A stretch of DNA of 64,000 nucleotides, taken from positions 124,001-188,000 of IMG/VR virus record IMGVR_UViG_3300037042_006844, one strand, 5' to 3'. The position numbers were made by a program, and so were the translations under genes. Of this stretch, positions 23,409-48,727 are shown one piece after another; the stretch's first letter is position 1, and the number at the start of each line of letters is the position of its first letter. The notes under the pieces were generated by a model, which was not told the origin of the DNA, did not search any database, and was given only the letters and a program-made list of their open reading frames with translations.

Positions 23409-24685
23409 GTCAATTGACACACGACCCTAAAGGGTCGGTGCTTGCCAGAGAAGAACCTCTGACGATTGGTTGATTGACAGCAACCTGTCCATCGAGTGCG
23501 GAGCACGAGATGGAGTGTTCTTTGTCATATCTAAAAGTGATATTGTTCGCAGCATTTAGGTCTGCGTCCAATACGACTTTATCAAGTCCATAATACCTAC
23601 ATCCTTTACGGACTCCGTTATCAAGACCACGATGGTCTAATTGGGATGTCCAGTGCGGATTAACGATGACCACTTGTTTTCCAAGTGATGCTGCCTTGTA
23701 GGTCAATATGTTCCTGAGAAGGAAATATGGCATTTGTGAATTGCGATTATTAAATCTTCGTCCTTTGAACTTGGATTTAATCTTGGTCAAATCCTCAATC
23801 ACAATGGTATTTGCCTTTGTGGTGAGAAGATGATTTACAACATTGTGTATGTAGTTCTTTGAAAAATGGTGTTCACGTCTGCGGAGTTTGGTTTGCTTAA
23901 CTCTGGTAGAATGTGATTTGTGAGATTGGAGTTTTCTCTTGTTCCAACGTATCTTACGTTTGGTTCGGTTAAACTCATTGCCTTTGATGATAATGCCTTC
24001 ACTGGTAGAAGCAAGTCGTTTGAGTCCCAAATCAACTCCAATACATTTTTTGTTGTCTTGGAATGTTGTGGTATCGTCAAATACAATAGAGAGGAACACT
24101 CTATCGTCTCTTACAAAAAGAGAAGGGTCTTTGAGTTTGTATTTTGAAAATAATTCGTTGACCTTATTATACTTGAGAAGTTTGGCAGTGATACGACCAT
24201 TACAAGTTGTCAGTTTAATGGCGTCTTGACCAATCCAAGTATAGATGCGAGTGTCCAGTTGGATGTTTAGTCGGTTTGTCTCAACTGGTTCTGTGATTTT
24301 ATGGCAATTGGAACGAAGAGATTTGTATTTTGCAACCACGTCTTGTTCTGCCTTAATGACAAACTGACTTGGAAGCATTGGAAGTTGTTCTCGAACCATC
24401 TTATAACATCTTTGGTGAAGAGGCATAAGACCATTACAGGACTTCATTCCAAATCGGATTTTAGATATGATATTGAAAGCATCACGTTTCAACGATAGTG
24501 ATTTGATGAGAGATTGTTTATCCTCATCATTTTCAAAAATCAGTTGAACATTGTATGTTTTCATTATTACTGGATATACATATTGTGAAGAAACAGAAAA
24601 CAACAAACTATTTTGAGAAAGTGAGATATTTTCGTTGCTCCTCCCCTACCCTAAAGGGATAGGGGTTTCCGCAACGAGTGAGAAT
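23409..24685 (-). mobile_element. IS200/IS605-family tnpB-only element
   Basis: end hairpins gaccctaaagggtc and cccctaccctaaagggatagggg; lies between promoter 23375-23402 and RNA ligase ATG. Confidence 0.85.
23410..24564 (-). CDS. tnpB: TnpB RNA-guided nuclease lacking the CxxC Zn finger
   Basis: RuvC GVDLG, IEDL, DADLNAA. Confidence 0.9.
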   Translation of the reverse strand: MKTYNVQLIFENDEDKQSLIKSLSLKRDAFNIISKIRFGMKSCNGLMPLHQRCYKMVREQLPMLPSQFVIKAEQDVVAKYKSLRSNCHKITEPVETNRLNIQLDTRIYTWIGQDAIKLTTCNGRITAKLLKYNKVNELFSKYKLKDPSLFVRDDRVFLSIVFDDTTTFQDNKKCIGVDLGLKRLASTSEGIIIKGNEFNRTKRKIRWNKRKLQSHKSHSTRVKQTKLRRREHHFSKNYIHNVVNHLLTTKANTIVIEDLTKIKSKFKGRRFNNRNSQMPYFLLRNILTYKAASLGKQVVIVNPHWTSQLDHRGLDNGVRKGCRYYGLDKVVLDADLNAANNITFRYDKEHSISCSALDGQVAVNQPIVRGSSLASTDPLGSCVN

Positions 24686-34503: not shown

Positions 34504-34579
34504 CATATTCAAACCCAAGTTTTGAAAAAAAGCGTTTGACTTCTTATCAAACGCTGCTAAGATGAGTTTATCGCTGAGA

Positions 34580-37012
34580 ATGAAAACTATCGCAACCAAT
34601 AACACAGTCACAAACAGTCCAAACCTTACTTCGACTGGATTTACCATCCGTCCGAAGAATTTGGGAAAAATCATCAATATCGTTGAGAACGACATCTATT
34701 CTGATAAAGTTCTCGCCGTTATCCGAGAATATTCCTGCAATGCCTACGATGCCAATATCGAAGCTGGCAAGCGGGAGACTCCCATCGTTGTTTCTCTACC
34801 ATCACGTTTGAGCAGTGAGTTCAAAGTTCGTGATTACGGCAATGGTTTGACCGAAGCTGAAATTCATGAGATTTATACCTCCTACGGTGAATCCACCAAA
34901 GAGGATTCCGATGATTATATCGGTCAGCTTGGAATTGGTAGCAAGAGCGGCTTTGCTTATGGTGAGAATTTCGTTGTGACCAGTTGGAAAAACGGAGTCA
35001 AAACCATTTACAACGCCGTAAAAGGCACCAATGAGCGTCAGATGGTGAAGCTGTTCAGCCTACCTTCCGATGAACCCAGTGGTATTGAAGTGACCATTCC
35101 TGTTAAAAACGGGGATGAGGTATCATTCAAAAACAAAAGCATTGAGTTTTTCAAGTATTGGAAAATCCAACCCAAGCTAATTGGTGCGAGCCAGCAAGAA
35201 ATCGACTCTTTCCAAACCCCAGTAATTCTTGAAGGCAAAGGTTGGCAAATTACCAAATCGTTCAACAGTAAATGGTCGGGTGTGTCTGCGATTGCCGTCA
35301 TGGGCAACATTTCATATCCTATTCAGTGGGGGTTGGTGCAAGATAAACTGCGCACCCATTTGGATTCGATGACCCAGGATAGAACGCTTTTCATGAAGTT
35401 TCTGCCGTTTATCACCAACAATCGGTTCGTGATTCGGTTCGGCATTGGGGACGTTCAGATGGCTCCCAGCCGAGAAGCATTGCAATACACTGACCGCACC
35501 GTTAATGGCATTGTCAAACGCCTTTTGGAAATCAGCAAAGAAATCGAAGCAGTGGTCCTCAATATTTTCAACAATTGCACAACGTTGTGGGAATACAAAG
35601 GTCATCTCAATAACATTTTTGGAAGAGCTTTGGGTGGTGGTTATTACTCTGCTCACGAGACTGTGTTCTATAGTATGTCAAACATTGAAGTGCTTTATGA
35701 TTTGGTTAAAAACAAATTGCATTTCAACGGAGCCAACGTGGTCAGCGCACATTACGAAAATGTTTCTTATTGGGATGTCAACAAAGGAAAAGTATCGATG
35801 GTGCTCCAACCAAAAGCATCTCCATCATTATCGCCAGGAGCAACTTTAAGTAGTAGTATGCAAGAGCCTGCCTACGAGTCAATCGTAACTAGCCATTACG
35901 TTAATAGCCGCGATAAATTGGTAACTGAGTCTCCGAGATTTGGAAACCAGTATTTCAAAATCATTGCCACTCCCCATGCACATTTTGTGATCATGGATAT
36001 TGATCGCAAAAGCAATGTCAAGCAGTGTCTCAAATGGTATATCAGTGAAGGCGCAAAAAATCCTAAATTGAATATTCAGCATCGTGCTCCGAAACTGGTT
36101 TATACACTACAATTTGGAAATGATGCGGTGCGTGCTGCATTTTTCAATGCGTTTAACATCAAAGGTGCTACAATTGTCAATTTCAGCCAAATATTTGAAC
36201 TGTATAAACCATTGATTCCAAAACGGCAGAGTTCTGCTACCAAGCTGGAAGATGATACTGTGTATTGCGGCATGATTAACCCTGGGAACCATTTCAGCTA
36301 CTATCGGTCCCGCAACACGCTCGACGCTCTGGCAGAGTGGAGAGCCAACGTTGATCTCAAAGCTGAAAAAGGGTTTTATGTTGATATGAGCAGTGCCAAC
36401 GGGAATGTTGTGATCAATGGTATGGTGATTACGCCTTGGACATTTTTCAGCAATATCAGTATGCTAAAAAATGCTGGTGTTGATTTTGGTCAAATTACTC
36501 GGGTTCAACTATTCGGTAGTCGCATTATGAATGGGAATAAATTTGATCGCAACAAACAAAATTGGACAAATTTTGTTACATACATGGAACAGTTTCTCCG
36601 GGGCTACGACAAAAGTCCGTTCGTGGCTTCGTCTGTTATACATAAAAGAGTTAATGATCCACATCGACCGTTTTATATTCACAAAGATGCATTGGCGCAG
36701 ATCGCGCAGTATTTTTCAAAAAATCATTTGTTGCACGAATTCCTCGGTGCGTTTCCTTGGATGCCGACCAACATTCAAGATCGGATTGGTATTTTGAATT
36801 CGTTGCACGTTGAGATTGTGCATGGAAAGGATGTTGCGGTTAAAGACACGATGGAACATTATTTTGACACGATCATCAAGAAATATCCCATGCTTAAAAC
36901 ACTGCTATTTGTCCCCAGTTATAAAGATGTGCAGGGTCAGGTCCCAGTGACGATTGTCCAAGAAATTGTTGATTATATTAAACTTGTTGACAGCCTTCAA
37001 AGTAACGGCTAA
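34580..37012 (+). CDS. rIIA: RIIA-like protein
   Basis: IYSDKVLAVIREYSCNAYDA, RDYGNGL, GQLGIGSKS, PSREALQY. Confidence 0.9.
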   Translation: MKTIATNNTVTNSPNLTSTGFTIRPKNLGKIINIVENDIYSDKVLAVIREYSCNAYDANIEAGKRETPIVVSLPSRLSSEFKVRDYGNGLTEAEIHEIYTSYGESTKEDSDDYIGQLGIGSKSGFAYGENFVVTSWKNGVKTIYNAVKGTNERQMVKLFSLPSDEPSGIEVTIPVKNGDEVSFKNKSIEFFKYWKIQPKLIGASQQEIDSFQTPVILEGKGWQITKSFNSKWSGVSAIAVMGNISYPIQWGLVQDKLRTHLDSMTQDRTLFMKFLPFITNNRFVIRFGIGDVQMAPSREALQYTDRTVNGIVKRLLEISKEIEAVVLNIFNNCTTLWEYKGHLNNIFGRALGGGYYSAHETVFYSMSNIEVLYDLVKNKLHFNGANVVSAHYENVSYWDVNKGKVSMVLQPKASPSLSPGATLSSSMQEPAYESIVTSHYVNSRDKLVTESPRFGNQYFKIIATPHAHFVIMDIDRKSNVKQCLKWYISEGAKNPKLNIQHRAPKLVYTLQFGNDAVRAAFFNAFNIKGATIVNFSQIFELYKPLIPKRQSSATKLEDDTVYCGMINPGNHFSYYRSRNTLDALAEWRANVDLKAEKGFYVDMSSANGNVVINGMVITPWTFFSNISMLKNAGVDFGQITRVQLFGSRIMNGNKFDRNKQNWTNFVTYMEQFLRGYDKSPFVASSVIHKRVNDPHRPFYIHKDALAQIAQYFSKNHLLHEFLGAFPWMPTNIQDRIGILNSLHVEIVHGKDVAVKDTMEHYFDTIIKKYPMLKTLLFVPSYKDVQGQVPVTIVQEIVDYIKLVDSLQSNG

Positions 37013-37105: not shown

Positions 37106-38398
37106 ATGATTAGCATAAGCCAAAGCACCAATAGCGTCACGATCATCATCTCCGATCCAGTGACCTTTACATACGAAGGACATTATACAGTTAATCGGGA
37201 TCAAGCCCATTACGAAGCTGTAATGGAAGCGATTCGCAACAACGATGAGGCTGCGATCAAGAATCTGTGCAATGTTTCAAAAGCCATTACAACCTACACC
37301 GAGGGTAAGGTCCGAGTTGAAAACGGTCACGTTTACTACGGCAATGTTCTTGTGGAGGGCATCATTGTGGATCGTATTTTGGGATTCATCAAGGAAAAGC
37401 TGCCCATTCAGCCCGTTCTTCGTTTCATCAACAAGCTCATGGAAAATCCTTCCAGCCGTGCTGTGAATGAACTCTACAAGTTCCTTGAGCACCGCAACAT
37501 GCCCATCGGTCCTGACGGCACTTTCTTCGCATACAAGGGAGTTCAGAATGATTATTTCAGCAAAACTGCTGGCGACATCGAAGTCATTGAAGGCATCGTG
37601 GCAGATGGTAAAATTCTGAATGCTGTTGGTCAACGAATCGAAGTAAAGCGTAATCAAGTTTGCGACAACAAAGACATTGGTTGCAGCAAAGGGCTTCATG
37701 CTGGCAGTCTGAAGTATGCTTGCGAGTTTGGCTCTGATGGCAAAGTTGTGATCGTGGAGATCGATCCCAAGGACGTTGTGAGCATTCCCACAGATTGCGG
37801 TTGTCAAAAGCTTCGGACTTGCGCCTACAAAGTGGTTGGAGAGTTCGAAGGAGTTCCTTTGAGCGACAACTATTGCGATGCATATTCAGATGATGATGCG
37901 ACCTACGAAGATGAAACTGACGAGAACGAAAGCGATCATTGTTGCGGCGATCCCGCCGACGGTTGCCCATGTGGTTGCGGCAGCGATCCCGAAAAGTGCA
38001 TTGCTCGTCCTGCGGATGATGACGATGACGAAATCATCGAAGTCGCGGTTTCCGACACAAACAATACGTGTTCTTCAAATTGTGAATGTAAATACGATGA
38101 AACCGATACATGCACCCATTGCGGAGGTAATCTTAACAGCGAATGCTGCCAGCACAGTGACGATTCCGAGCCACAAACCGTTCTGGACGATGCTTTCGGC
38201 GAGGGATTTGATGATGGATACGATGACGGTGTAAACAGTTTGGGATATCAAGGCACGACTTTGGATATCACCGAAGATGTTGTTCGCAATGAGCACATTG
38301 TGACTGCCGCCCAATACAGCGAGGTCTGGAAAGAGGGATACCAGAAGGGATATGATGAAGGTGTGCGGGAACGTCCAGACAATAATGTTAACGTCTGA
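37106..38398 (+). CDS. rIIB: RIIB-like protein with Cys/acidic C-terminal extension
   Basis: ENPS, LYKFL, FAYKGV, CSKGLHAG, DVVSIP.D...KLRTC.Y. Confidence 0.9.
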   Translation: MISISQSTNSVTIIISDPVTFTYEGHYTVNRDQAHYEAVMEAIRNNDEAAIKNLCNVSKAITTYTEGKVRVENGHVYYGNVLVEGIIVDRILGFIKEKLPIQPVLRFINKLMENPSSRAVNELYKFLEHRNMPIGPDGTFFAYKGVQNDYFSKTAGDIEVIEGIVADGKILNAVGQRIEVKRNQVCDNKDIGCSKGLHAGSLKYACEFGSDGKVVIVEIDPKDVVSIPTDCGCQKLRTCAYKVVGEFEGVPLSDNYCDAYSDDDATYEDETDENESDHCCGDPADGCPCGCGSDPEKCIARPADDDDDEIIEVAVSDTNNTCSSNCECKYDETDTCTHCGGNLNSECCQHSDDSEPQTVLDDAFGEGFDDGYDDGVNSLGYQGTTLDITEDVVRNEHIVTAAQYSEVWKEGYQKGYDEGVRERPDNNVNV

Positions 38399-38428
38399 CC
38401 GCACATAGGATAGATTATAAATACCACC

Positions 38429-38460
38429 AGAGGGGCAGCGAAAGCTGCCCCTCTTTTTTG
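38429..38460 (+). terminator. rho-independent terminator
   Basis: agaggggcagc-gaaa-gctgcccctct + T-run. Confidence 0.85.
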
Positions 38461-38511
38461 TTGAAAATTATTTGAGTTGACGTTTTGCCAATTGGCGGTA
38501 TAGTTATGTAT

Positions 38512-38713
38512 GTAGCCGAGATGAGATTTATAAGTCGAAGCTGCGAAACAGCTGTTAACCCAACCCATCTCCCCAGAAGCCAACACCATTTCCATGGTTT
38601 CGGGTGGTATAGTTTCCGTCCGACCTCAGATGTCTCTGTAAGGGGCTGCATCTGGAGGTAGGGATCCGATCACCGACTCTGTTCAAATTCCAACAAAGAA
38701 AGACGTTTAAGAT
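38512..38713 (+). ncRNA. structured RNA / 5' leader of nadV
   Basis: promoter TTGACG-N16-TATAGT at 38477-38504; several stems, GAAA and GTAA loops. Confidence 0.5.
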
Positions 38714-40111
38714 ATGAATAAAAACATCTGTTTAACTACTGACAGCTACAAGCTAAACCATTGGAATCAATACCCTCGTAACACCGAGATTGTGTATAGT
38801 TATTTCGAGTGTCGCAAAGGAGCAACCTTCGCCGAAACCCCGTTCTTCGGGCTTCAATACATTATTAAAAGCCACCTTGAGGGCGCAGTCGTGACCAGGG
38901 AGAATATTGAGAAGGCAGCTAGGCTTTGCAAATTCCATTTTGGCGACGAGCGTTACTTCAACCGTGAGGGCTGGGAATACATCCTCAATAATTGGGGAGG
39001 TAAACTTCCAGTCGTTATCAAGGCTGTTGAGGAGGGAACTGTGGTTCCGGTCAACAACGTGTTGATGACCATTGAGAATGTGGGCGGTGCCATGACGGCT
39101 TGGCTCACCAATTTCCTTGAGACGATTTTGTCCCAAGTATGGTATCCCACAACCGTTGCAGCTTTGAGCCGTGAGGTCAAAAAGAATATCAAAGAATATC
39201 TTGATTTAACCAGTGAGGGCGGACTGCTCAATTTCGGACTGCATGATTTTGGGTTCCGGGGGGCATCGTCTTGGGAATCTGCTGGTATTGGTGGTGCGGC
39301 TCATCTAATCAACTTCCTTGGCACCGATACTTTGGTCGCGATGGAGGTCGCCATGAACTATTACAATGCAAACCTCGAAGGATTAGCATACAGTGTGGCA
39401 GCAACCGAGCACAGTGTGATGACTGCTTTGGGCAAGGACGGTGAGGAAACGGTCGTCGAGAATCTGCTCAATGAATATCCCACGGGTATTCTTTCTGTGG
39501 TCTCCGATAGCTACGACATCTACAATTTTGTTAACAACATCGTTGGACGCAAATTTAAGGATTGGATTCTTGAGCGTGATGGTGTGTTCGTGGTTAGACC
39601 AGATTCCATTACTCCGAGCCATCCAACTCCTGAGCAGGAAATGGTTTGGATTATGTGGAGTCTTTGGGACAATTTTGGTGGCATTATAAACAGCAAGGGA
39701 TTTAATGTTATCAATCCCAAGGTTCGTGTTCTTTGGGGCGATGGAATCGATTTGGAAGGTATCAAAAAGATTCTGTGTGCTGTTGCCGATGCTGGATTTG
39801 CAACCGAAAATATCGCATGTTTCGGAATGGGTGGCGGACTCTTACAGAAAGTCAATCGTGATACACAGCGTTGTGCATTCAAATCGTCTGCACAGTATCG
39901 CAACGGTCAGTGGTTTGATATTTTCAAGAGTCCCAAGGATATTTCCAAGGCTTCCAAAAAGGGCAAGCTCAAGCTCACCAAGATTGACGGCAAGTTCGTT
40001 ACTGTTGGTGAAAACGATCCCGGTGAGGATTATTTGAAGGTTGTGTTTACGAATGGTGTGCTGGTCAAGGAAATTGACTTTGCAACCGTTCGCAAGAACG
40101 CTGCTCTATGA
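38714..40111 (+). CDS. nadV: nicotinamide phosphoribosyltransferase
   Basis: TDSYK, LHDFGFRG, ATEHS, SVVSDSYD, RPDS, GDGI, FGMGG.L. Confidence 0.95.
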   Translation: MNKNICLTTDSYKLNHWNQYPRNTEIVYSYFECRKGATFAETPFFGLQYIIKSHLEGAVVTRENIEKAARLCKFHFGDERYFNREGWEYILNNWGGKLPVVIKAVEEGTVVPVNNVLMTIENVGGAMTAWLTNFLETILSQVWYPTTVAALSREVKKNIKEYLDLTSEGGLLNFGLHDFGFRGASSWESAGIGGAAHLINFLGTDTLVAMEVAMNYYNANLEGLAYSVAATEHSVMTALGKDGEETVVENLLNEYPTGILSVVSDSYDIYNFVNNIVGRKFKDWILERDGVFVVRPDSITPSHPTPEQEMVWIMWSLWDNFGGIINSKGFNVINPKVRVLWGDGIDLEGIKKILCAVADAGFATENIACFGMGGGLLQKVNRDTQRCAFKSSAQYRNGQWFDIFKSPKDISKASKKGKLKLTKIDGKFVTVGENDPGEDYLKVVFTNGVLVKEIDFATVRKNAAL

Positions 40112-40155
40112 ACTACCCACCCGCTAAAGCAGGCGGGTTTTCTGCTCCCACAAAG
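40108..40155 (-). mobile_element. 48-bp internally deleted mini-IS (both ends of the 59406-60706 family fused)
   Basis: atgaactacccacc.gctaaagcagg.gggtt matches 59406; ttctgctccc.caaag matches 60691-60706. Confidence 0.85.
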
Positions 40156-40167
40156 ATAAAATTGTGA

Positions 40168-40213
40168 AAATGGTCGGAATTCCTCCCCTTAGGGGTTTCC
40201 TTCCTCCAAAACT
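40168..40213 (-). mobile_element. solo IS end remnant with shortened hairpin
   Basis: aatggtcggaattcctcc...ggtttccttcctccaaaa shared with 18933. Confidence 0.7.
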
Positions 40214-40266
40214 ATGAAATGGATTAATCCCCTTGACTTCTATAAAATCTGTGGTATACTTTAGAT

Positions 40267-40401
40267 ATGAGTGAATATAAAATAAAAACTGTCGTTAATA
40301 TAGAGTTGGAAAAGGATCATGTTACTGTTGTGGTGTGTGAAAAAGCAGGGTATTTAGTTCATTATTTCTCATTCGACAATTCGATGGTCATTACTTGGTG
40401 A
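40267..40401 (+). CDS. 44-aa hypothetical protein (not in ORF track)
   Basis: TTGACT-N16-TATACT-N6-ATG; MSEYKIKTVV...VITW. Confidence 0.5.
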   Translation: MSEYKIKTVVNIELEKDHVTVVVCEKAGYLVHYFSFDNSMVITW

Positions 40402-40413
40402 AAACATAAACGT

Positions 40414-40962
40414 ATGATAAAACTCAAATTACAACAGTGTTTGTGGATCAATCTGGCGTTTCCAGAATCATCCAAACTGCAACAGCGTGGTATTGCCGAC
40501 AAGATTGAATCCGACTGCGTTGACATTATCAAAGCAAATTTCACCAATGTAAAAGCTGCTCGCAGTCGCAGAAGCATTGAAGATGTCACGGTGGAAGGTT
40601 GTTATGTTGACATCAAAACCAGCGATGAAGTTTTAATGTTCAAAATGCCCAACTTGATCAGCATTGATCGGCTTCACAAGTTGGATAAACCACTGTTCTA
40701 TGTGTTTGTTACCTATAACAGCATCAACAAAGTTATTCTCGACATTAAAGTGATGAACGTCTATGAATTGAACTGGAGCCAATTGCATATCCAAAATTTG
40801 GGTGTGGGACAGCTTCAAATCAAAAACATGTCGAGATTCATGAAAGCTGGTCCCAGCGCGATGAATGAGCAAACGTGGAAAAACACATTGAAACAACAAG
40901 CGGTTCTTTTCTACGACAAGCTGATCAAAAAAACAGAAATTCGTAAAAATAAATGGTCGTAA
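40414..40962 (+). CDS. putative PD-(D/E)xK restriction-endonuclease-like protein
   Basis: IED...VDIKT, MPNLISI.RL. Confidence 0.55.
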   Translation: MIKLKLQQCLWINLAFPESSKLQQRGIADKIESDCVDIIKANFTNVKAARSRRSIEDVTVEGCYVDIKTSDEVLMFKMPNLISIDRLHKLDKPLFYVFVTYNSINKVILDIKVMNVYELNWSQLHIQNLGVGQLQIKNMSRFMKAGPSAMNEQTWKNTLKQQAVLFYDKLIKKTEIRKNKWS

Positions 40963-40977
40963 TAATATAAAATCACT

Positions 40978-41958
40978 ATGAACGTGAACACTCTAAAGTT
41001 ATTTGCGGGAACCAGCAACGTTCCACTTGCTGAACGTATAGCTTCCAATTTTTTGAACTCCAAACTCGGCGATATTTTTCACCACAAATTTCCCAGCGGA
41101 GAAACATATTGCCAATTTCGTGAGAATATTCGTGGGTGTGATGTGTTTTTGATTCAAAGCATCACTGCTCCCGCCAACGAAAATTTGATGGAATTGTTGG
41201 TGATGGCGGATGCTGCTAGACGCGCCAGTGCAGACCGCATTACTGCAATCATTCCCTATTTTGGCTATGCCAGACAAGATAGAAAAGAGAAAAGCAGGGT
41301 GCCGATCACTGCCAAGCTCGTTTTGGACTTGATCGAAGCGAGCGGAATTGACCGTGTGGTAACTATGGATTTGCACAGTCCACAGGTCAGTGGCTTCACC
41401 AACCTTCCGTTCGACCATCTGACCTTTGAACCCGTATTGAACAATTGGATTAGAAACAAATACCATAGTTTGGCTTTGCGAGACAGTGTTATTTTGATGG
41501 CACCCGATGTTGGAGCCGTCAAACGTGTGGAAAAATACGCAACCACGCTTGGCACTGACTTTGGATTCATCAGCAAAAAGCGTGTGGGTGATGATACGGT
41601 TGAATTGCAAAGCATTGTTGGTGACGTGGCTGACAAGCACGTTGTTATCATCGATGATCTGACCGAGAGTTGCGGAACCATGATTCAAGCTGCCAAGGCT
41701 TGCAAACACAATGGAGCCAAAAATGTGACATGTGCGGTGACTCATGGAGCTTTCACGAATATTGGTGTGGAACGTTTGTGTGAAACATCCAGCATCGATC
41801 ATTTGGTTCACAGCAACACAGTGAATCATGCATGGGACACAAACATGGATATGTGCAAAGACCCTCGCAGCATCACACAGCTTGATGTCAGCATGTTGTT
41901 TGCCAAAGCAATCAGCAGCATTCACAACAACGAAAGCATCAGTGAATTATTTGTATGA
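40978..41958 (+). CDS. prs: ribose-phosphate pyrophosphokinase
   Basis: FPSGE, PYFGYARQDRK, DLHS, APDVG, IIDD..SCGT, THG. Confidence 0.95.
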   Translation: MNVNTLKLFAGTSNVPLAERIASNFLNSKLGDIFHHKFPSGETYCQFRENIRGCDVFLIQSITAPANENLMELLVMADAARRASADRITAIIPYFGYARQDRKEKSRVPITAKLVLDLIEASGIDRVVTMDLHSPQVSGFTNLPFDHLTFEPVLNNWIRNKYHSLALRDSVILMAPDVGAVKRVEKYATTLGTDFGFISKKRVGDDTVELQSIVGDVADKHVVIIDDLTESCGTMIQAAKACKHNGAKNVTCAVTHGAFTNIGVERLCETSSIDHLVHSNTVNHAWDTNMDMCKDPRSITQLDVSMLFAKAISSIHNNESISELFV

Positions 41959-42045
41959 TAGCAACATTTACTGATATATATTACCAGATACGCACATAAA
42001 AAGAAAGTGCTTGCAGTTTGATGGAACGGTGTTAAGATAGAAGTG

Positions 42046-42139
42046 TTGATGGTTCTTTGCATGGTGAGGGGAGCAGCCCTTCCAGAACATCTTTGAATGG
42101 CGGAGTCGCCTCGACCTAAAAATCGAATGCGACCATCGA
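42046..42139 (+). ncRNA. putative ~95-nt hairpin sRNA
   Basis: promoter TTGCAG-N16-TAAGAT at 42011-42038; nested pairings. Confidence 0.45.
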
Positions 42140-42148
42140 AAAGAACAG

Positions 42149-42177
42149 TTGACAGACAGAGCAAAGTCTGCTAAGAT
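42149..42177 (+). promoter_or_regulatory. tRNA array promoter
   Basis: TTGACA-N17-TAAGAT with TG extension. Confidence 0.75.
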
Positions 42178-42212
42178 AGATGAAGTTAGCAGTTGATTTT
42201 TGAAATTAGAAT

Positions 42213-42287
42213 GGGGTCTAAGCTTTAATGGTGAAGCAAGCGGCTTTTAACCGCTAGAAGACGGATCGTTACCGTCAGGCCCTACCA
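42213..42287 (+). tRNA. tRNA-Lys(TTT)
   Basis: cloverleaf, anticodon loop ct-ttt-aa, encoded CCA; atypical T-loop ATCGTTA. Confidence 0.85.
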
Positions 42288-42303
42288 AATTTACAGTTAA
42301 AAT

Positions 42304-42379
42304 GGGGTTATCGTCTAATGGCTAGGACGGGAGACTTTCAATCTCCAAATCGTGGGTTCAATTCCCCGTAGCCCTACCA
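42304..42379 (+). tRNA. tRNA-Glu(TTC)
   Basis: ggaga-ct-ttc-aa-tctcc, GTTCAATT, CCA. Confidence 0.9.
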
Positions 42380-42387
42380 TTTTCACT

Positions 42388-42610
42388 GTCAGGTCAATAA
42401 TGACAGACCGTTAGCAATAAGCGGTGTCAATGTGCAAAAAAATTCAAGTGGTATAGCACATCTGACGTTATAGATTCCACTTGATGGTGGAGGGGCGCGG
42501 AATAGCCCCCTAGACAAACAGATTGACGGATTGATATAATCGAAGGATATTATATCTAATGCAACAGATAAATCCGATATAATGGTTTGTCGAGAGTTTG
42601 ACATAACTCT
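42388..42610 (+). ncRNA. unknown multi-stem pseudoknotted RNA
   Basis: at least 8 helices including 8-bp loop pairing tcaagtgg/ccacttga. Confidence 0.6.
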
Positions 42611-42623
42611 ACAACAACATATG

Positions 42624-42699
42624 TCTGGTTGCGGGGATGAGCCAATGGTGTCTCGGTTATCCGATTGGATCGAGATTCAATAACCCTACAATCGGACCA
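42624..42699 (+). ncRNA. tRNA-sized CCA-ended non-cloverleaf RNA
   Basis: ctggttg/caatcgg stem + ACCA; no T-arm. Confidence 0.5.
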
Positions 42700-42709
42700 A
42701 TTTTATAAT

Positions 42710-42786
42710 TGCGGAATAGAGTTCTGGTGAACTCCGGTGTCTCATAAGCACTCGCTAGAAAAGTTCGATTCTTTTTTCCGCTACCA
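42710..42786 (+). tRNA. tRNA-Met(CAT), partly initiator-like
   Basis: ct-cat-aa loop; 1:72 mismatch; lacks 3 G-C anticodon-stem pairs. Confidence 0.8.
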
Positions 42787-42791
42787 ATTTC

Positions 42792-42885
42792 GGTTCTGTA
42801 GTTTAACTGGTAAAACCCCATACTTATAATATGGTAATCGCTAGATGTGCGTGACTTCTCGGTTCGAATCCGAGCAGAACCACCA
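42792..42885 (+). tRNA. tRNA-Ile(TAT) with long variable arm
   Basis: ccata-ct-tat-aa-tatgg, ~23-nt V region, GGTTCGAATCC, ACCA. Confidence 0.8.
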
Positions 42886-42949
42886 AATTTATGACGAACG
42901 TGTCATAAAAAAACAAAGTTACATTGAATTAATACTAATATAATAGAAT

Positions 42950-43276
42950 ATGAAAAAGATACTTCTAACAGTTGCAACCCTCTCTCTTCTTTTGACCGCT
43001 AGTGCGGTTGATACCAAGGAACTCTACGATTCACAATGCTCCAAGTGTCATGGAACAAATGGCAATGGTGTGACCAAGATGGGTCAAAAGCTCAATGCGA
43101 AGGATTGGACCGATGTCAAGATTCAAGCCGCAATGACCGAGACCAACATGGTCAAGGCAATTAAGGTGGGCATTAAAGATGCCGAGGACAAGACTCGCAT
43201 GAAGGCATATTCAGATATGACTGATGCCGATGTGACGAATTTGGTTACGTATATCAAAACCTTCAAAAAGCAATAA
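42950..43276 (+). CDS. class I c-type cytochrome, exported
   Basis: signal peptide, CSKCH, distal RMKAY Met. Confidence 0.9.
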   Translation: MKKILLTVATLSLLLTASAVDTKELYDSQCSKCHGTNGNGVTKMGQKLNAKDWTDVKIQAAMTETNMVKAIKVGIKDAEDKTRMKAYSDMTDADVTNLVTYIKTFKKQ

Positions 43277-43294
43277 CATCGTATATAACATCGT

Positions 43295-43624
43295 ATGAAG
43301 AAATCATTGATGCTCGGGGTTTTGATTCTCAGCGGAATGTTGTGTCAAGCACAAAACGCTGGAACCAACGAATTGTATAACAGCAAGTGCAGCAAGTGCC
43401 ATGCAAAAGATGGCTCGGGCAACACACTGATGGGCAAAAAGTATAGTGCGAAAAACTATACAGATGCAGCCGTCCAAAACAAGCTTACTGATGAAGCTTT
43501 TGATAAGTCCCTCAAAGAGGGTTACACCGATGCCGAAGGCAAGAAAGTAATGCAGGCTTTTCCAGAGCTTACGGCACTGGAGCGCAAGGAACTCATCAAA
43601 ACGATGCGGTCCTTCAAGAAATAA
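43295..43624 (+). CDS. class I c-type cytochrome, exported (paralog)
   Basis: signal peptide, CSKCH, distal VMQAF Met. Confidence 0.9.
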   Translation: MKKSLMLGVLILSGMLCQAQNAGTNELYNSKCSKCHAKDGSGNTLMGKKYSAKNYTDAAVQNKLTDEAFDKSLKEGYTDAEGKKVMQAFPELTALERKELIKTMRSFKK

Positions 43625-43643
43625 GATTGACATATCAATTTAT

Positions 43644-43716
43644 GCGGAATTAGTGTCATGAGGAGCACGGCTATCGACCAGATAGCAAGGTTGGTGCAAG
43701 TCCAAATTCCGCTCCA
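43644..43716 (+). tRNA. atypical tRNA-Gly-like (ACC)
   Basis: gcggaat/attccgc + T + CCA; loop cg-acc-ag; T-loop TGCAAGT. Confidence 0.65.
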
Positions 43717-43724
43717 CTTTTTCA

Positions 43725-43800
43725 GGGCTCTTAGCTTAATTGGTTAAGCAGCAAACTCATAATTTGTTGAGTGGGGGTTCGAGTCCCTCAGGGCCCACCA
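43725..43800 (+). tRNA. tRNA(CAT), probably Ile2
   Basis: gggctct acceptor, ct-cat-aa, GTTCGAGT, ACCA. Confidence 0.85.
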
Positions 43801-43803
43801 TTT

Positions 43804-46134
43804 CTATCCTCTTCCAACAGTTGTTATTGGGTATGACGTAATTCTCGCCCAGTCTATATCGAATTGTCGAACAGTAACAATGGTCGGCCAAATTTGGATA
43901 CCAAATTGATATCCCGTGGTTGCTGGCATGATATATGAACTGGTTCCGTATTGAATGCCATCGATCAAATAATGCATTTTGTTTGTAACGTTGTTTCTGA
44001 CCAATTGGAATTTATGCCAGCCATCATCACCAGCCGATCCACTTCCGTATTTCACAGACGTTGGGAATGATTGATTGATGCTGGCACTTCGCGCAGCATA
44101 TCTCCAAGAACCAGTGATGGACCCCACCGATCCAGTTCTTTCAAAATAAAATCCTCTGACTACCCCTGTTGCCAATATATCACTAAACAATCCGACTCGC
44201 ATTATATGATCTGGGGCTGTTTGAACATTTCTCATAATGGTTTCAAATGATCTAAAATCGCCCCATGCAATATGCATCGGTTGGGTTGGTGCCGCTATAA
44301 GCCCTGGTGTAAACGCACTCGGTGTAGTTGTGGAAGTGCTGCTTTGCCTTCTCAACACACCAGGATGCCCCAGCGTTGAACTTAGCGTGGGAAGCATTGT
44401 TCCGTTATATATATTCCAACCATCATAGACTTGGTCTGCCGACTGGTGCGCCGATAAAAATTCCCAAGATATATCTACAAGTCTGCTGGTATCTCTATAC
44501 CCCAACAAATAGCTAGCTGACGTGGCATTTGTGGCGGTTGTTGTGCTTGTTGCACTGGCAGCTTTCACTGCCCAACTGCTTGTGATTGGATACGTAGAAG
44601 CAGAAAGCAATCCTTTTTGATAATACGATCCGTGCTGACCATCGAGTTTATCAGAATCACTGGAATAGCTGCTGAAGCTTGCGGACGTTACATGTTGCGC
44701 CCAACTGCTTGTTATTGGATACGTTGAGGCTGTGTGCAGCGTTGTTCCACCTCCTGGTGCCCAACTTGCACTACGGGCATTTTCAGCCCAGCTTGAGGTA
44801 AACGGATATGTCGAACCAGTATGCAGTGTCGTGCCGCCTCCACTTGATGGTGCCCAACTTGCACTACGTGCTTGATTTGCATAGCTGGCAGTTCCAGCAA
44901 ATAATGATGCAGTAATTACTGAACAACTTATATGCCCCGCAACGTCCAGTGTATTTACTGGGTTGCTGACTCCTATACCAACTTTTCCGTTTGGTTGTGG
45001 TTGCCCAGTAGTCCCAGGAGTATTTGCGAATATAACATTGGCAATGTTTGTTTGATCTGGCGCAGTGTTTATGGCTCCTCGACCAATTGCAATGCTGTTA
45101 CCATACCCTCCTGTCGATGTATAATCTCCGATCAAAATTGAAGAGGAATTTCCCGCCGAGTTATTAACCGTGTCAGTCTGACCCGCTGCATAACCTATGA
45201 AAATGCTGTTATTTGCTGTAGTAGCCCCCGATCCAGCCCACGTTCCGATGAAATTGCTATTCAAAGCTCCAGTCGCCGAATCCCCTGCCGAATATCCAAT
45301 GAAATTGCTGTTGTATGCATTTGAAGCATTAGCACCAGCAAAGTATCCAATGAAATTGCTTTCATATGCGTTTATTGCATTAACACCCGCTCTGTCACCG
45401 ATGAAATTACTACGTGCGGCATGATCAGCACTAGAGCCAGCAAAGTATCCAATGAAATTACTGTCGCCCGCATCGGTTGAGAATTTTCCCGCTTTATATC
45501 CAATGAAATTGCTGGCTCTGACACTACCAGATGCGCCATATCCCGTTTGATATCCTATAAAATTGCACTCCATGGCATCGGGGGCATTATATCCAGAACC
45601 ACTTCCAATAAAATTGCTTTTGACGGGAGCACTTCCTGTATTGCTGACGATGTGCCCAATTAATATCAGATTTCCAGCAATACTGGCTCCCGTATTAATT
45701 TGAAGACCGTTGTTTGGAGAAATCGATGCGGATGCACTTCCACTTATGATTTTGGATGGATCGCCGCCGCCAGGTGCCCAACTTGCACTGTGGGCATGGC
45801 TTGAACTATGAGCATGGCTTGCACTGTGGGCATGGCTTGCACTACGAGCATAACTAGATGATGTCGCATTATCGGCTTTCAAAGCATGGCTTGCACTGTG
45901 TGCGTGGCTTGAGCTTCTTGCCCAGCTTGCACTGTGTGCATGGCTTGAGCTTCTAGCATAGCTCGCCGACACAGCGTTTCTTGCCCAACTGCTTGTGATC
46001 GGGTATGATGAACCAGTGCGAATTCCTGGTAGATTTACCGAATTGCCGAGTCCGTCATAATAGCTAGCCGATGCTATTTGCACCAACCGTCCATATGTGG
46101 TTGATATTTGCTTTCCTAGTAAAGAATAGTTCAT
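43804..46134 (-). CDS. fibre-like virion protein with SASWA and SNFIG repeats
   Basis: YPITSSWA/SASHA repeats, 17-aa SNFIGxxAG repeats, GKVGIGVSNP..LDV.G. Confidence 0.7.
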   Translation of the reverse strand: MNYSLLGKQISTTYGRLVQIASASYYDGLGNSVNLPGIRTGSSYPITSSWARNAVSASYARSSSHAHSASWARSSSHAHSASHALKADNATSSSYARSASHAHSASHAHSSSHAHSASWAPGGGDPSKIISGSASASISPNNGLQINTGASIAGNLILIGHIVSNTGSAPVKSNFIGSGSGYNAPDAMECNFIGYQTGYGASGSVRASNFIGYKAGKFSTDAGDSNFIGYFAGSSADHAARSNFIGDRAGVNAINAYESNFIGYFAGANASNAYNSNFIGYSAGDSATGALNSNFIGTWAGSGATTANNSIFIGYAAGQTDTVNNSAGNSSSILIGDYTSTGGYGNSIAIGRGAINTAPDQTNIANVIFANTPGTTGQPQPNGKVGIGVSNPVNTLDVAGHISCSVITASLFAGTASYANQARSASWAPSSGGGTTLHTGSTYPFTSSWAENARSASWAPGGGTTLHTASTYPITSSWAQHVTSASFSSYSSDSDKLDGQHGSYYQKGLLSASTYPITSSWAVKAASATSTTTATNATSASYLLGYRDTSRLVDISWEFLSAHQSADQVYDGWNIYNGTMLPTLSSTLGHPGVLRRQSSTSTTTPSAFTPGLIAAPTQPMHIAWGDFRSFETIMRNVQTAPDHIMRVGLFSDILATGVVRGFYFERTGSVGSITGSWRYAARSASINQSFPTSVKYGSGSAGDDGWHKFQLVRNNVTNKMHYLIDGIQYGTSSYIMPATTGYQFGIQIWPTIVTVRQFDIDWARITSYPITTVGRG

Positions 46135-46162
46135 ATTTAGAGTCAGTGTGTATATATAATTA

Positions 46163-48727
46163 TCAATAATATCTTCCGTCCACAAACGAATTTCCTGCGG
46201 TGCTACCTGGGAAATAACTTGCCCCAGCACCACCACTGTTTATAATTGCAAACGAGTTGGCATTGTATCGTTGTCCAGATGCGGTTCCAACCCATGTAAT
46301 TCCTGGAGCATACACAACGCCAAAAGTATCGGCTGCGCAAAACCATGCTGTGAACGCAAGAGACCCAACTAAAGTAACTGTCCAACCACCATCAGCACTG
46401 ACTGTGGCACTGTTTGAAGCATACCAGTGTCCCAACCCTCCAGCAACAATACTATAACTTCCCCCAAGTCTCACATTTGCTCCGAACAGTGATGCTATAT
46501 GCAAACTTCCAGCGGGAACCGTTCCAAACCGAATGCCCGCCCCAGTCGCAACTGTTGTATATGGTCCTGATGCATAAATACAATGTTGTGTGGTGGATCT
46601 TAATTCCATATTTTGGAACACGAATTTTCCGAACACGTTTGCCGCATATATCGAATTTTTGCCAGCAGCAGGAGAACCAGAGAGAATGACATTTGCGGGA
46701 GTTCCAGAATTTCCATTAAATATTACTCGCCCCGATCCAACAACGTTTGACAGATTTACAGTCTGCGCATATGTTCCATCTGCCAATTGAACCGTTACGT
46801 CGTATATTCCAGTATCAATTGACGAAACTACATCCATTGCTTTCTGCAAAGTTGCAAATGGAGCACCGACTGTCAATCCATTGTTTGAATCGTTGCCAGT
46901 TGTGCTAACATAATATGTTCTTTCCGCCAGCAACACTGTGCGAGTCGTTGCCGATGTTGGTGCTGGAGCATATGATGCTGATACGGCATTTCTAGCCCAA
47001 CTGCTTGTTATTGGATATGTGCTGCCAGTGCGAAGTGTTGATCCTCCACCCCCACCACTGCTTGGTGCCCAACTTGCACTACGAGCTTGTTTTGCATAAC
47101 TTGCTGTGCCAGCAAACAATGATGCGGACACAACCGTCGCCGATATGTTTCCGGCCACATCCAATGCATTAACTGGGTTGCTGACTCCTATACCAACTCT
47201 ACCGTTGGATTGAACAGAGCCAGTTGTTGTGGTGCCAGTATAAATACCCGTTGCGAACAACACATTTCCAATGCTCACTTGTTCTGGTAGAGTATTTTGA
47301 ACTCCCTGACCAATCGCAATGCTGTTGCTGTTACCACCAGTTGACGTAAAATCACCAATCAGTATTGAAGATTTTCCTATCACTGAGTTATCAACGATAT
47401 CAGCGTAACCTGCACTATAACCTATGAAAATACTGTTGTTGGCTTTGGGTGCGTTAACACCACACCAACGACCAATGAAATTGCTGTATGATGCGCTTAC
47501 TGAGTTCTGTCCAGCAGCAAATCCTATGAAATTGCTGTTATTGGCTTCGGTTGCTTCAGAGCCAGCACTGACACCTATAAAATTGCTTTCATATGCATTT
47601 ACAGCCCAGTTGCCCGAACCCATTCCAATAAAATTGCTGCTGTGGGCATTGGTGGCTTGTGATCCAGCACCCGCTCCAAAAAAATTACTGTTTGTGGCAC
47701 TGACGGCGTTGATGCCAGCACTATTTCCCATGAAGTTGGAAAACGAGGCTTCAGCAGCATTGATACCAGCCCAAATTCCAATAAAATTGCTGTTTTCAGC
47801 ATTTGTTGCTGCTTCGCCAGCTTGTGTTCCAATGAAATTGCTGTTGTTGGCGTTTGCTGCTTGATTTCCAGCACCGGCACCAACAAAATTGCTATATACC
47901 GCATATACTGCTTGATTTCCAGCACCATCTCCAACAAAATTGCTATGGTGGGCATATGATGCGCTGAGTCCAGCTTCATAGCCCAACAAATTGGTATTGG
48001 CTGGAGGAGTTTTTGTGTTGACGATATAACCAGTTATCAATACATCCCCTTCAAAACTTGCAGATGTGTTGACTTGCAAGCCCCCAGCTGGCGAAATCGA
48101 GGCTGATACGCTGCCATTGATAATTCTGGTTGGTTCACCGCTACCACCCGGTGCCCAGCTTGCACTTCGAGCGTGGTTTGCATAACTGGATGATGATGCG
48201 TTTGAACTGATATTGATCAGCATTTTTCCAGCCGTTGTGTGTTGGTATAAACAATATCCAACCACAGTTGGCACTGCGTTTCCATCTGGGGGAGTCAATG
48301 AGTATCTACCAGGAGTTGTTCCGCTCAAATACAATAATGACCCAGCCGAATAGCCCGATGTATTGACATCATTGACTTGACCTTGGGCTGTAACGTATCC
48401 TTTGCTTGCACTGAGAATATTTTGAGCAGCTACACCAGCAACGTTGTATTTCTTCGTAACACCATCACTGATTGCTTTGAAACCGATTGGGTATGTTAGC
48501 AAAGACCCCGACAGTGTTATAGCATCACCCGCAGAAATATTTTCGCCAGCATAAATTTGCCCAAGGGTCTCTTGACCAATTTTCAACGTCAATCCAGATT
48601 GATCGTTGTATACGGCGTATGTGTGGTTATCTTTGTCCCAAAACAGCAACCCTTCTTGCCATGCAGGTTTTGTTGCATTGGTAGCCGCTTGGATATACGA
48701 ATTCTGATCTATTTGAAAAATGTGCAT
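46163..48727 (-). CDS. fibre-like virion protein with beta-helix-like C-terminus
   Basis: same repeats; YYVSTTGNDSNNG..PFATLQKA..LADGTY; TATTTAT upstream. Confidence 0.75.
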   Translation of the reverse strand: MHIFQIDQNSYIQAATNATKPAWQEGLLFWDKDNHTYAVYNDQSGLTLKIGQETLGQIYAGENISAGDAITLSGSLLTYPIGFKAISDGVTKKYNVAGVAAQNILSASKGYVTAQGQVNDVNTSGYSAGSLLYLSGTTPGRYSLTPPDGNAVPTVVGYCLYQHTTAGKMLINISSNASSSSYANHARSASWAPGGSGEPTRIINGSVSASISPAGGLQVNTSASFEGDVLITGYIVNTKTPPANTNLLGYEAGLSASYAHHSNFVGDGAGNQAVYAVYSNFVGAGAGNQAANANNSNFIGTQAGEAATNAENSNFIGIWAGINAAEASFSNFMGNSAGINAVSATNSNFFGAGAGSQATNAHSSNFIGMGSGNWAVNAYESNFIGVSAGSEATEANNSNFIGFAAGQNSVSASYSNFIGRWCGVNAPKANNSIFIGYSAGYADIVDNSVIGKSSILIGDFTSTGGNSNSIAIGQGVQNTLPEQVSIGNVLFATGIYTGTTTTGSVQSNGRVGIGVSNPVNALDVAGNISATVVSASLFAGTASYAKQARSASWAPSSGGGGGSTLRTGSTYPITSSWARNAVSASYAPAPTSATTRTVLLAERTYYVSTTGNDSNNGLTVGAPFATLQKAMDVVSSIDTGIYDVTVQLADGTYAQTVNLSNVVGSGRVIFNGNSGTPANVILSGSPAAGKNSIYAANVFGKFVFQNMELRSTTQHCIYASGPYTTVATGAGIRFGTVPAGSLHIASLFGANVRLGGSYSIVAGGLGHWYASNSATVSADGGWTVTLVGSLAFTAWFCAADTFGVVYAPGITWVGTASGQRYNANSFAIINSGGAGASYFPGSTAGNSFVDGRYY

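What the first reader, a model, noticed from the sequence alone, without database searches (positions are those of the whole stretch)
38714..41958. nadV + prs NAD module that fits neither described NARP layout cleanly
Known: NARP1 is a Prs-like Adps plus a Nampt-like Namat; NARP2 is Nampt plus Nmnat; both counter NAD-depleting defences. Seen: Nampt-like and Prs-like genes about 0.9 kb apart, both resembling canonical enzymes. The Prs ribose-phosphate loop is divergent (DDLTESCGT) and no Nmnat is in the window. Inference: either NARP1-like or a PRPP-boosted salvage variant.
Basis: partly seen in the sequence, partly recalled or inferred. Interest (0 to 1): 0.6.

Follow-up and report, generated by a model that had tools for sequence, protein, structure and literature searches.

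The report
Phage nicotinamide salvage with own PRPP supply
A freshwater jumbo phage carries an ordinary nicotinamide phosphoribosyltransferase next to an ordinary PRPP synthase, a known NAD-rebuilding pathway (NARP2) that brings its own PRPP supply, and this strain has lost the enzyme for the last step.

Summary
Both genes are real and lie at the stated coordinates. Neither is a NARP1 enzyme.

- **Nampt.** The 465-aa protein is a canonical Nampt. It scores 521 bits on NF006629 (cut-off 405) and carries GMGGGLLQKVNRD where Namat has its aromatic clamp. It is separated from four Namat references at 100/100 support.
- **Prs.** The 326-aa protein is a canonical class I PRPP synthase. It passes NF002320 and TIGR01251 and aligns over its full length with E. 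coli Prs, including the C-terminal module that Adps lacks. It falls on the cellular side of the Prs/Adps split.
- **The "divergent" loop.** DDLTESCGT is within bacterial range (DDLTETAGT, DDMTESGGT). Only the Cys is unusual.
- **Conservation.** nadV-then-prs is conserved in 15 of 17 related viral contigs, which also carry a NatV/NadM-like Nmnat-Nudix gene upstream of nadV. The ancestral layout is therefore NARP2 plus Prs.
- **Loss of natV.** A sister strain about 99% identical has rIIB–TnpB–natV–orf207–nadV. This genome has 140 bp where that 3.1-kb segment lies, and no natV anywhere in 303 kb.
- **The gene between them.** It is an EcoRV/SwaI-like nuclease, not an NAD enzyme.

Verdict: a new variant of a known kind, of moderate interest.

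The parts
38429..38454 (+). terminator-like hairpin (11-bp stem, T run) closing the rIIA-rIIB unit
   Evidence: consensus scan only
38477..38504 (+). sigma-70-like promoter match (TTGACG-16-TATAGT) upstream of nadV
   Evidence: consensus scan only
38551..38690 (.). 140-bp segment at the place where the ~99% identical sister strain has 3,119 bp holding TnpB, the natV-like Nmnat-Nudix gene and orf207
   Evidence: A Logan contig of the probable source sample spans it with 0 differences at depth 41.5
38714..40111 (+). nadV: canonical nicotinamide phosphoribosyltransferase (Nampt), NARP2 type
   Evidence: (NF006629, 521 bits against cut-off 405)
40113..40337 (.). 225-bp segment replacing 897 bp (four small ORFs) of the sister strain. 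It holds a recurrent terminator-like hairpin (40119-40138), a ~60-bp repeat found beside TnpB copies elsewhere in the genome (40168-40219), and a promoter-like match (40233-40260)
40414..40962 (+). orf182: PD-(D/E)XK nuclease with an EcoRV/HincII/SwaI-like fold. It is not an NAD enzyme. It lies 15 bp upstream of prs
   Evidence: pLDDT 93.5; TM 0.73 to R.SwaI 5tgq
40978..41958 (+). prs: canonical class I ribose-phosphate diphosphokinase (PRPP synthase)
   Evidence: (NF002320, 350.6 bits against cut-off 297; TIGR01251, 330.6 against 113)

Best explanation
The two genes are a canonical Nampt (NadV) and a canonical class I PRPP synthase (Prs). The proposed route is this. [quoted passage not shown] Nampt joins PRPP to nicotinamide, the product of NAD-cleaving defences, to give NMN. 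In the phage clade that shares this cassette, a NatV/NadM-like Nmnat-Nudix gene sits just upstream of nadV and would finish the job (NMN + ATP -> NAD+). The ancestral module is therefore NARP2 with its own PRPP supply. That offsets the PRPP drain the NARP2 authors named as the pathway's cost. In this particular genome the natV segment is missing, so NMN must be adenylylated by a host enzyme or by an unrecognised phage enzyme. Shown here: gene identities, family placement, conserved linkage, and the natV indel. Inferred: enzyme activities, flux coupling, and the counter-defence role.
For: Identity:
- Both proteins score above the NCBIfam cut-offs.
- Prs aligns over its full length with E. coli Prs at 243 bits. 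Nampt aligns with human NAMPT at 389-398 bits, against 248 bits for SPbetaL1 Namat 9W5W/9W5X.
- Nampt catalytic motifs HDFGFRG, GTDT, EHS and RPDS are conserved.
- The Prs motifs are conserved across the clade: RQDR, DLH, KKR, DD..GT and the C-terminal ESISELF.

Trees:
- Adps references split from all others at SH-aLRT 100. The window Prs sits in a 99-supported clade on the canonical side.
- Namat references split at 100/100. The window NadV sits with KVP40-like, S-B3, DSS3P8 and RsoM2USA Nampts.

Linkage:
- nadV lies upstream of prs on the same strand in 15 of 17 related loci, 54 bp to 4.3 kb apart.

natV:
- It lies upstream of nadV in 7 loci. It is present in 4 of 5 further records, in L194, and in sister strains L203-L205.
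- It aligns over its full length with annotated NadM/Nmnat of S-B3 and DSS3P8.

Published background:
- NARP2 consumes PRPP, and this is proposed as its cost (bioRxiv 10.1101/2024.02.11.579819).
Against: - No activity was measured.
- This genome has no Nmnat homologue, so as encoded the pathway stops at NMN.
- nadV and orf182-prs may be separate transcription units here, because a terminator-like hairpin and a promoter-like match lie between them.
- In relatives prs also sits beside nucleotide-metabolism genes (nucleoside deoxyribosyltransferase-like, phosphoesterase), so PRPP may serve nucleotide synthesis as well.
- The record is linear and estimated 89% complete.
Confidence: 0.72

Rival explanations
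1. NARP1-like pair: the Prs-like protein is an Adps that pyrophosphorylates ADP-ribose, and the Nampt-like protein is a Namat that makes NAD+ directly from ADPR-PP.
For: A Prs-family gene and a Nampt-family gene lie within two genes of each other, as in NARP1 operons. The PP-loop variant PDVGA is shared with the Adps references.
Against: - The Adps clade is separated at SH-aLRT 100.
- The C-terminal module is kept, whereas Adps lacks it. The window has DLH and DD..ESCGT, not DPHS and DDIC/SDGG (PMC13586617).
- The Namat signature GSX.X.X.TRD with aromatic residues is absent, and the beta1-beta2 loop is short (PMC12774641).
- Gene order and sizes are reversed. NARP1 has adps of ~285 aa, then namat of 536-593 aa.
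- Identity to Adps-clade phage proteins is only 25-32% and partial.
Confidence: 0.03
2. The two genes are general metabolic helpers, not a counter-defence unit. Prs feeds nucleotide synthesis for a 300-kb genome, and Nampt without Nmnat is a decaying remnant with little effect on NAD+.
For: natV is lost in this strain. Nucleotide-metabolism genes neighbour prs in relatives. MaAM05 has a canonical Prs without Nampt. Huge phage LR756502 has both genes, but 418 kb apart.
Against: nadV and prs are more conserved than the few neighbouring genes that have any match (85% and 74% identity, against 23-62% for those), and most neighbours have none. They stay linked in 15 of 17 loci despite variable inserts. 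nadV is intact at 99.4% DNA identity to the sister strain.
Confidence: 0.17
3. The last step is done by the phage's own 264-aa HIGH-motif nucleotidyltransferase (G000:C1 about 300980-301774), acting as a non-orthologous Nmnat.
For: It has GGFKPPHxGH and SISASxLR motifs. The AF2 model has pLDDT 83, and its top fold match is NadM 2qjo, with NMNAT, NadD and PPAT following. It is the only other PF01467-like hit in the record.
Against: The fold does not separate NMNAT from PPAT. The family is widespread (539 stretches in IMG/VR). Nine records carrying it, one of them 100% complete, have no nadV. It was not found in five nadV-prs records, though these are fragments. It lies away from the NAD genes.
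Confidence: 0.08
4. The absence of natV is an artefact of assembly or of the incomplete record.
For: The record is linear and 89% complete. The natV-less junction was seen only in the probable source sample.
Against: An independent Logan assembly of that sample gives a 22.7-kb contig across 37500-41500 with 0 differences at depth 41.5. In relatives natV lies within about 2 kb upstream of nadV (within 1 kb in the sister strain), and that position is fully covered here. No remnant was found, even at E=100 in the junction region.
Confidence: 0.06

Closest known systems
NARP2 (KVP40 NadV Nampt + NatV Nmnat/Nudix; Osterman et al., bioRxiv 10.1101/2024.02.11.579819)
   Same: The Nampt is of the same clade and motif type. 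Relatives and the sister strain carry a NatV/NadM-like gene directly upstream of nadV, as in S-B3 and DSS3P8.
   Different: A canonical Prs is linked downstream. It is absent from four complete NARP2-type phages: nt-1, S-B3, DSS3P8 and RsoM2USA. This genome itself lacks the Nmnat.
NARP1 (Adps + Namat)
   Same: The same two protein superfamilies lie side by side.
   Different: Both proteins are of the canonical, not the repurposed, subfamily. Gene order and lengths differ. The substrates are predicted to be R5P and PRPP, not ADPR and ADPR-PP.
Engineered NMN production by co-expressing Nampt with PRPP synthetase (PMC6095924, listed; only its title was seen here, and the design is recalled from my own knowledge)
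   Same: The same two-enzyme logic applies: PRPP supply limits Nampt flux, so a Prs is added.
   Different: That is a laboratory design in E. coli. Here the pair is a natural, conserved phage cassette.
NARP3 (PnuC + NadR-like; PMC13464706)
   Same: It is another phage route that rebuilds NAD+ from a precursor.
   Different: No PnuC is present, and no NadR-like protein was found: the only clear cytidylyltransferase-like hit is CoaD-CoaE, and the only other hit is the weak 264-aa HIGH NTase.

Membership tests
Adps (NARP1 step 1) | Falls in the phage Adps clade, separate from cellular Prs | tested here: not met
   four Adps references split off at SH-aLRT 100. The window Prs is on the other side with 38 bacterial Prs.
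Adps (NARP1 step 1) | Loss of the C-terminal alpha11-alpha12 module (PMC13586617) | tested here: not met
   the C-terminus ...AISSIHNNESISELF aligns to the end of E. coli Prs. The Adps references end before it.
Adps (NARP1 step 1) | Remodelled loop after the DD pair (ICP1: D212 D213 I C D x A A S) | tested here: not met
   the window has DDLTESCGT, as in bacterial DDLTETAGT and DDMTESGGT. The Adps references have DDICDGG.. or DDISDGG...
Adps (NARP1 step 1) | Pyrophosphorylates ADPR, not R5P | not testable with these tools
   Needs an enzyme assay.
Namat (NARP1 step 2) | Selectivity-clamp helix motif GSX.X.X.TRD with aromatic X (PMC12774641) | tested here: not met
   the window has GMGGGLLQKVNRD (human GSGGGLLQKLTRD). 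The Namat references have G[VI]GS[YF]TYQ..TRD.
Namat (NARP1 step 2) | Extended beta1-beta2 clamp loop and Namat clade membership | tested here: not met
   the loop is short, as in Nampts; the Namat clade is separated at 100/100.
NARP2 | KVP40-type Nampt | tested here: met
NARP2 | Nmnat (NatV/NadM-like) encoded in the same genome | tested here: not met
   none in the 303,564 bp held (89% complete). It is met in the sister strain and relatives.
NARP2 | Restores NAD+ and overcomes NAD-depleting defence | not testable with these tools
   Needs infection or co-expression assays.
Class I ribose-phosphate diphosphokinase (TIGR01251 / NF002320) | Score above curated cut-offs, with full-length architecture | tested here: met
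   330.6 bits against cut-off 113, and 350.6 against 297; three Pfam domains; residues 6-325 align to 5-314 of E. coli Prs.
Class I ribose-phosphate diphosphokinase (TIGR01251 / NF002320) | Catalytic and substrate-binding motifs (RQDR, DLH, K-x-R loop, DD....GT) | tested here: met
   R99, D101, R102, H133, K200, R202, D226, D227, G233 and T234 are invariant across the clade alignment.
Nampt (NF006629) | Equivalog score above cut-off, and active-site residues | tested here: met
   521.3 bits against cut-off 405. HDFGFRG, GTDT, EHS, RPDS and GDG align with human NAMPT.
NARP3 | PnuC transporter plus NadR-like bifunctional enzyme | tested here: not met
   no PnuC; the strong PF01467 hit is CoaD-CoaE, with NadR models at only 22-24 bits; the other hit is the weak HIGH NTase.

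The most novel reading that the evidence does not exclude
A clade of freshwater jumbo phages runs a self-supplied three-enzyme NAD+ reconstitution route (Prs -> Nampt -> NatV). It starts from ribose-5-phosphate rather than from the host's PRPP pool, which removes the metabolic cost attributed to NARP2. The natV-less strain seen here would show that Prs+Nampt alone is retained and useful, with NMN handed to a host adenylyltransferase.
Probability: 0.35. Interest if true: 0.6.

Novelty: new variant of a known kind. Interest (0 to 1): 0.45.

Why it matters
The authors of NARP2 pointed to PRPP consumption as the likely reason the pathway is rarer than NARP1. A phage lineage that keeps a housekeeping-type PRPP synthase linked to its Nampt suggests that phages have met that cost by bringing the supply enzyme with them.

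The pair of ~99% identical strains, one with natV and one without, is a ready-made natural comparison. It can test which steps a phage must encode itself.

There is also a practical caution for annotation. "Prs next to Nampt" in a phage is not enough to call NARP1. The C-terminal module, the loop after the DD pair, and the clamp motif separate the two cases quickly.

Tried and rejected
- **Riboswitch or structured leader upstream of nadV.** Rfam at E<=1 over 38300-44000 gave only tRNAs and sub-threshold noise. The 216-nt leader folds no better than shuffles, z = 0.17.
- **natV remnants.** tblastn at E=100 on the junction region and E=10 on the genome, and an HMM of natV/NadM proteins against all six-frame ORFs, found nothing beyond the shared HxGH motif.
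- **CoaD-CoaE fusion as the missing Nmnat.** Rejected. It passes the PPAT and DPCK equivalogs, and the NMNAT models score far below cut-off.
- **264-aa HIGH nucleotidyltransferase as Nmnat.** The fold is compatible, but it does not co-occur with nadV. It is kept only as a weak rival.
- **orf182 as an NAD enzyme.** Rejected; it has a nuclease fold.
- **Other NAD-related genes in the genome.** No PnuC, NAD synthase, NAD-dependent ligase or Nudix.
- **Literature.** Searches for a described Nampt + canonical Prs + Nmnat phage module found none. The jumbo-phage NAD paper PMC11662467 does not mention PRPP or Prs. Subscription journals are not covered.
- **Bacterial donor of prs.** None is evident. 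The best bacterial identities are 40-46%, across many phyla.
Full report
**Setting.** The window is bases 124001-188000 of a 303,564-bp linear viral record, estimated 89% complete. It is a jumbo phage. rIIA (34562-37012) and rIIB (37106-38398) lie just upstream of the finding. A tRNA cluster and two cytochrome c ORFs lie downstream. No isolated phage is close at the DNA level. Public runs that hold the stretch are lake-water and freshwater-sediment metagenomes.

**The observation.** ORFs at 38714-40111 (465 aa) and 40978-41958 (326 aa) are on the + strand, 866 bp apart. Pfam gives NAMPT_N + NAPRTase for the first. It gives Pribosyltran_N + Pribosyltran + Pribosyl_synth for the second. The gap holds a 182-aa ORF (40414-40962).

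**Is the Prs-like protein an Adps?** No.
- It passes NF002320 (350.6 bits against cut-off 297) and TIGR01251 (330.6 against 113).
- It aligns from residue 6 to 325 with E. coli Prs residues 5-314 at 243 bits.
- The 2026 Adps structure paper gives three family marks: loss of the C-terminal alpha11-alpha12 module, a remodelled loop after the DD pair, and degenerate regulatory sites (PMC13586617). The last of these was not examined here.
- In my alignment with four Adps references (Felix O1, KIT04, MrDarsey, PAK_P2), the window protein keeps ...IHNNESISELF, DLHSPQ and the K-K-R loop. The Adps references are truncated and read DPHS.
Among 75 bacterial Prs, DDLTETAGT and DDMTESGGT occur, position 5 is E in 26, and position 6 is S in 10. 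Only Cys232 is particular to the phage clade.
- In a 57-row tree the Adps references split off at SH-aLRT 100. The window protein and ten metagenomic homologues form a 99-supported clade on the side of 38 bacterial Prs. The Adps branches are long, so their internal order is unreliable, but the split itself is clear.
- By tblastn, 860 phage records hold a homologue, and only 33 cover at least 80% of the query. The Adps-type records match at 25-32% over part of the length.

**Is the Nampt-like protein a Namat?** No.
- It scores 521 bits on NF006629 (cut-off 405).
- It scores 389-398 bits against human NAMPT and 346 against Xanthomonas Nampt. It scores only 248 against SPbetaL1 Namat (9W5W/9W5X).
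- The Namat paper defines an adenine clamp: a longer beta1-beta2 loop and the motif GSX.X.X.TRD with aromatic X (PMC12774641). The window protein has GMGGGLLQKVNRD, identical to roseophage DSS3P8 NadV and close to human GSGGGLLQKLTRD, and its loop is short. The four Namat references read G[VI]GS[YF]TYQ..TRD and have the longer loop.
- HDFGFRG, GTDT, EHS and RPDS align with the human active site.
- In the tree the Namat references are separated at 100/100. The window protein groups with NARP2-type Nampts.

**Is the pairing meaningful?** Yes.
- The Prs has many relatives at 67-99% identity on contigs of up to 336 kb.
- In 17 related viral loci, nadV lies upstream of prs on the same strand in 15. 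The distance ranges from 54 bp to 4.3 kb, and the inserts vary: Pth2, a GIY-YIG endonuclease, small ORFs.
- Of the two exceptions, one is cut by the contig end.
- nadV (85%) and prs (74%) are more conserved than the few neighbouring genes that match this genome at all (23-62%); most neighbours have no match.

**The missing third gene.**
- In seven of these loci a 318-aa gene sits directly upstream of nadV. It has a C-terminal NUDIX domain.
- Both halves hit the NadM-type bifunctional Nmnat/Nudix models, though far below their cut-offs.
- It aligns over its full length with the annotated Nmnat/NadM of S-B3 and DSS3P8, at E 1e-14 and 4e-11.
- It is also present in 4 of 5 further records of the clade and in a 248-kb contig.
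- The clade's layout is therefore natV-nadV-...-prs, which is NARP2 plus Prs.
- Four complete NARP2-type phages (nt-1, S-B3, DSS3P8, RsoM2USA) have no Prs. MaAM05 has Prs but no Nampt. Huge phage LR756502 has both, 418 kb apart.
- I found no paper describing this three-gene set.

**This genome lacks natV.**
- A PF01467 search finds only two hits. One is a CoaD-CoaE fusion at window 18989-20122, which passes the PPAT and DPCK equivalogs. The other is a weak hit in a 264-aa protein near the record's end.
- Nothing is added by a direct protein search, tblastn, a NUDIX search or a natV/NadM HMM against all six-frame ORFs.
- The reason is visible in a sister strain. Contig L203 (164 kb) is about 99% identical in DNA. 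It reads rIIA-rIIB-TnpB(-)-natV(322 aa)-orf207(-)-nadV-four small ORFs-orf182-prs-cytochromes.
- Its natV is 72% identical to those of the clade.
- The window has 140 bp (38551-38690) in place of that 3,119-bp segment. It has 225 bp (40113-40337) in place of an 897-bp segment.
- The same TnpB (97% aa) sits elsewhere in this genome, with several paralogues. A ~60-bp repeat found beside those copies also lies at 40168-40219. IS605-type activity near nadV is therefore a plausible cause, but this is inferred, not shown.
- An independent Logan assembly of the probable source sample spans 37500-41500 without a difference at depth 41.5. Lake-water runs from another study carry the sister form at both indels.
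- Only contigs were available, so the proportions of the two forms are unknown.

**Candidates for the last step.** The 264-aa protein has HxGH and ISxSxxR-type motifs. Its confident model (pLDDT 83) matches NadM first, then PPAT, NadD and archaeal NMNAT. The family is widespread. It occurs in nine records without nadV, one of them complete. I rate it a weak candidate; a host enzyme is more likely. The genome has no PnuC, NAD synthase or NAD-dependent ligase.

**The gene in the gap.** orf182 has 281 homologues, all unnamed. Its model (pLDDT 93.5) matches R.SwaI, HincII and EcoRV, and E56, D57, D66 and K68 are invariant. It is a PD-(D/E)XK nuclease, not part of NAD chemistry. It lies next to prs in another relative, but on the other side.

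**Expression signals.** These are consensus scans only. A strong hairpin follows rIIB, and a promoter-like site precedes nadV. A recurrent hairpin follows nadV, and a promoter-like site precedes orf182-prs. No riboswitch was found.

**Verdict.** The NARP1 reading is rejected, and the "PRPP-boosted salvage" reading is supported and sharpened. The ancestral unit is NARP2 with a linked canonical PRPP synthase, and this strain is a natV-less derivative. All functions are inferred from sequence. The assays listed under next steps would decide.

Noticed in passing
window 18989-20122 (+): A 377-aa fusion of phosphopantetheine adenylyltransferase (CoaD; TIGR01510, 162 bits) and dephospho-CoA kinase (CoaE; TIGR00152, 82 bits). 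These are the last two steps of coenzyme A synthesis, encoded by a phage.
   Followed up: partly
window 42950-43276 and 43295-43624 (+): Two tandem small cytochrome c ORFs set among tRNA genes. They are conserved in the sister strain.
   Followed up: no
window 23410-24606 (-); G000:C1:267231-268319, 270754-271854, 237591-238667, 144982-145314: Several TnpB/IS605-OrfB paralogues in one phage genome. A ~60-bp repeat lies beside them and recurs at window 40168-40219. One copy occupies a different site in the ~99% identical sister strain, which suggests recent mobility.
   Followed up: partly
window 40414-40962 (+): A conserved 182-aa protein family (281 homologues, all unnamed) folds like the type II restriction enzymes SwaI, HincII and EcoRV.
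   Followed up: yes
G000:C1 about 300980-301774 (-) = L002:841-1635: A 264-aa HIGH-motif nucleotidyltransferase of unknown substrate. The family is large (539 stretches in IMG/VR), and its fold lies between NMNAT and PPAT.
   Followed up: partly
window 40119-40138 (+): A terminator-like hairpin after nadV recurs at six or more other places in the genome. It gathers extra contigs in the read layout, so it looks like a repeated intergenic element.
   Followed up: no
window 38542-38695: This 154-bp stretch includes the 140 bp that replace the natV segment. In two lake-water runs it lies inside a different 15-kb contig at about twice the phage's depth, so the replacement sequence may have come from elsewhere by recombination.
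   Followed up: no
window 43804-48727 (-): Two overlapping large ORFs (810 and 854 aa) stand where the sister strain has one 1,298-aa ORF. The region is internally repetitive and is the most diverged part of the comparison.
   Followed up: no
L004:1400-2767: One related contig has a diverged nadV (48% identity) whose clamp region reads GCGSYLVRKLNRD, partly like Namat.
   Followed up: no
window 42792-42885 (+): ARAGORN calls a 94-nt tRNA-Ile (anticodon TAT), which is unusually long for that type. Rfam confirms a tRNA there.
   Followed up: no
G001:C1:14388-15302 (record of L003): The natV-like gene of another relative has one in-frame TAA inside the match. It may be a second case of natV decay.
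   Followed up: no
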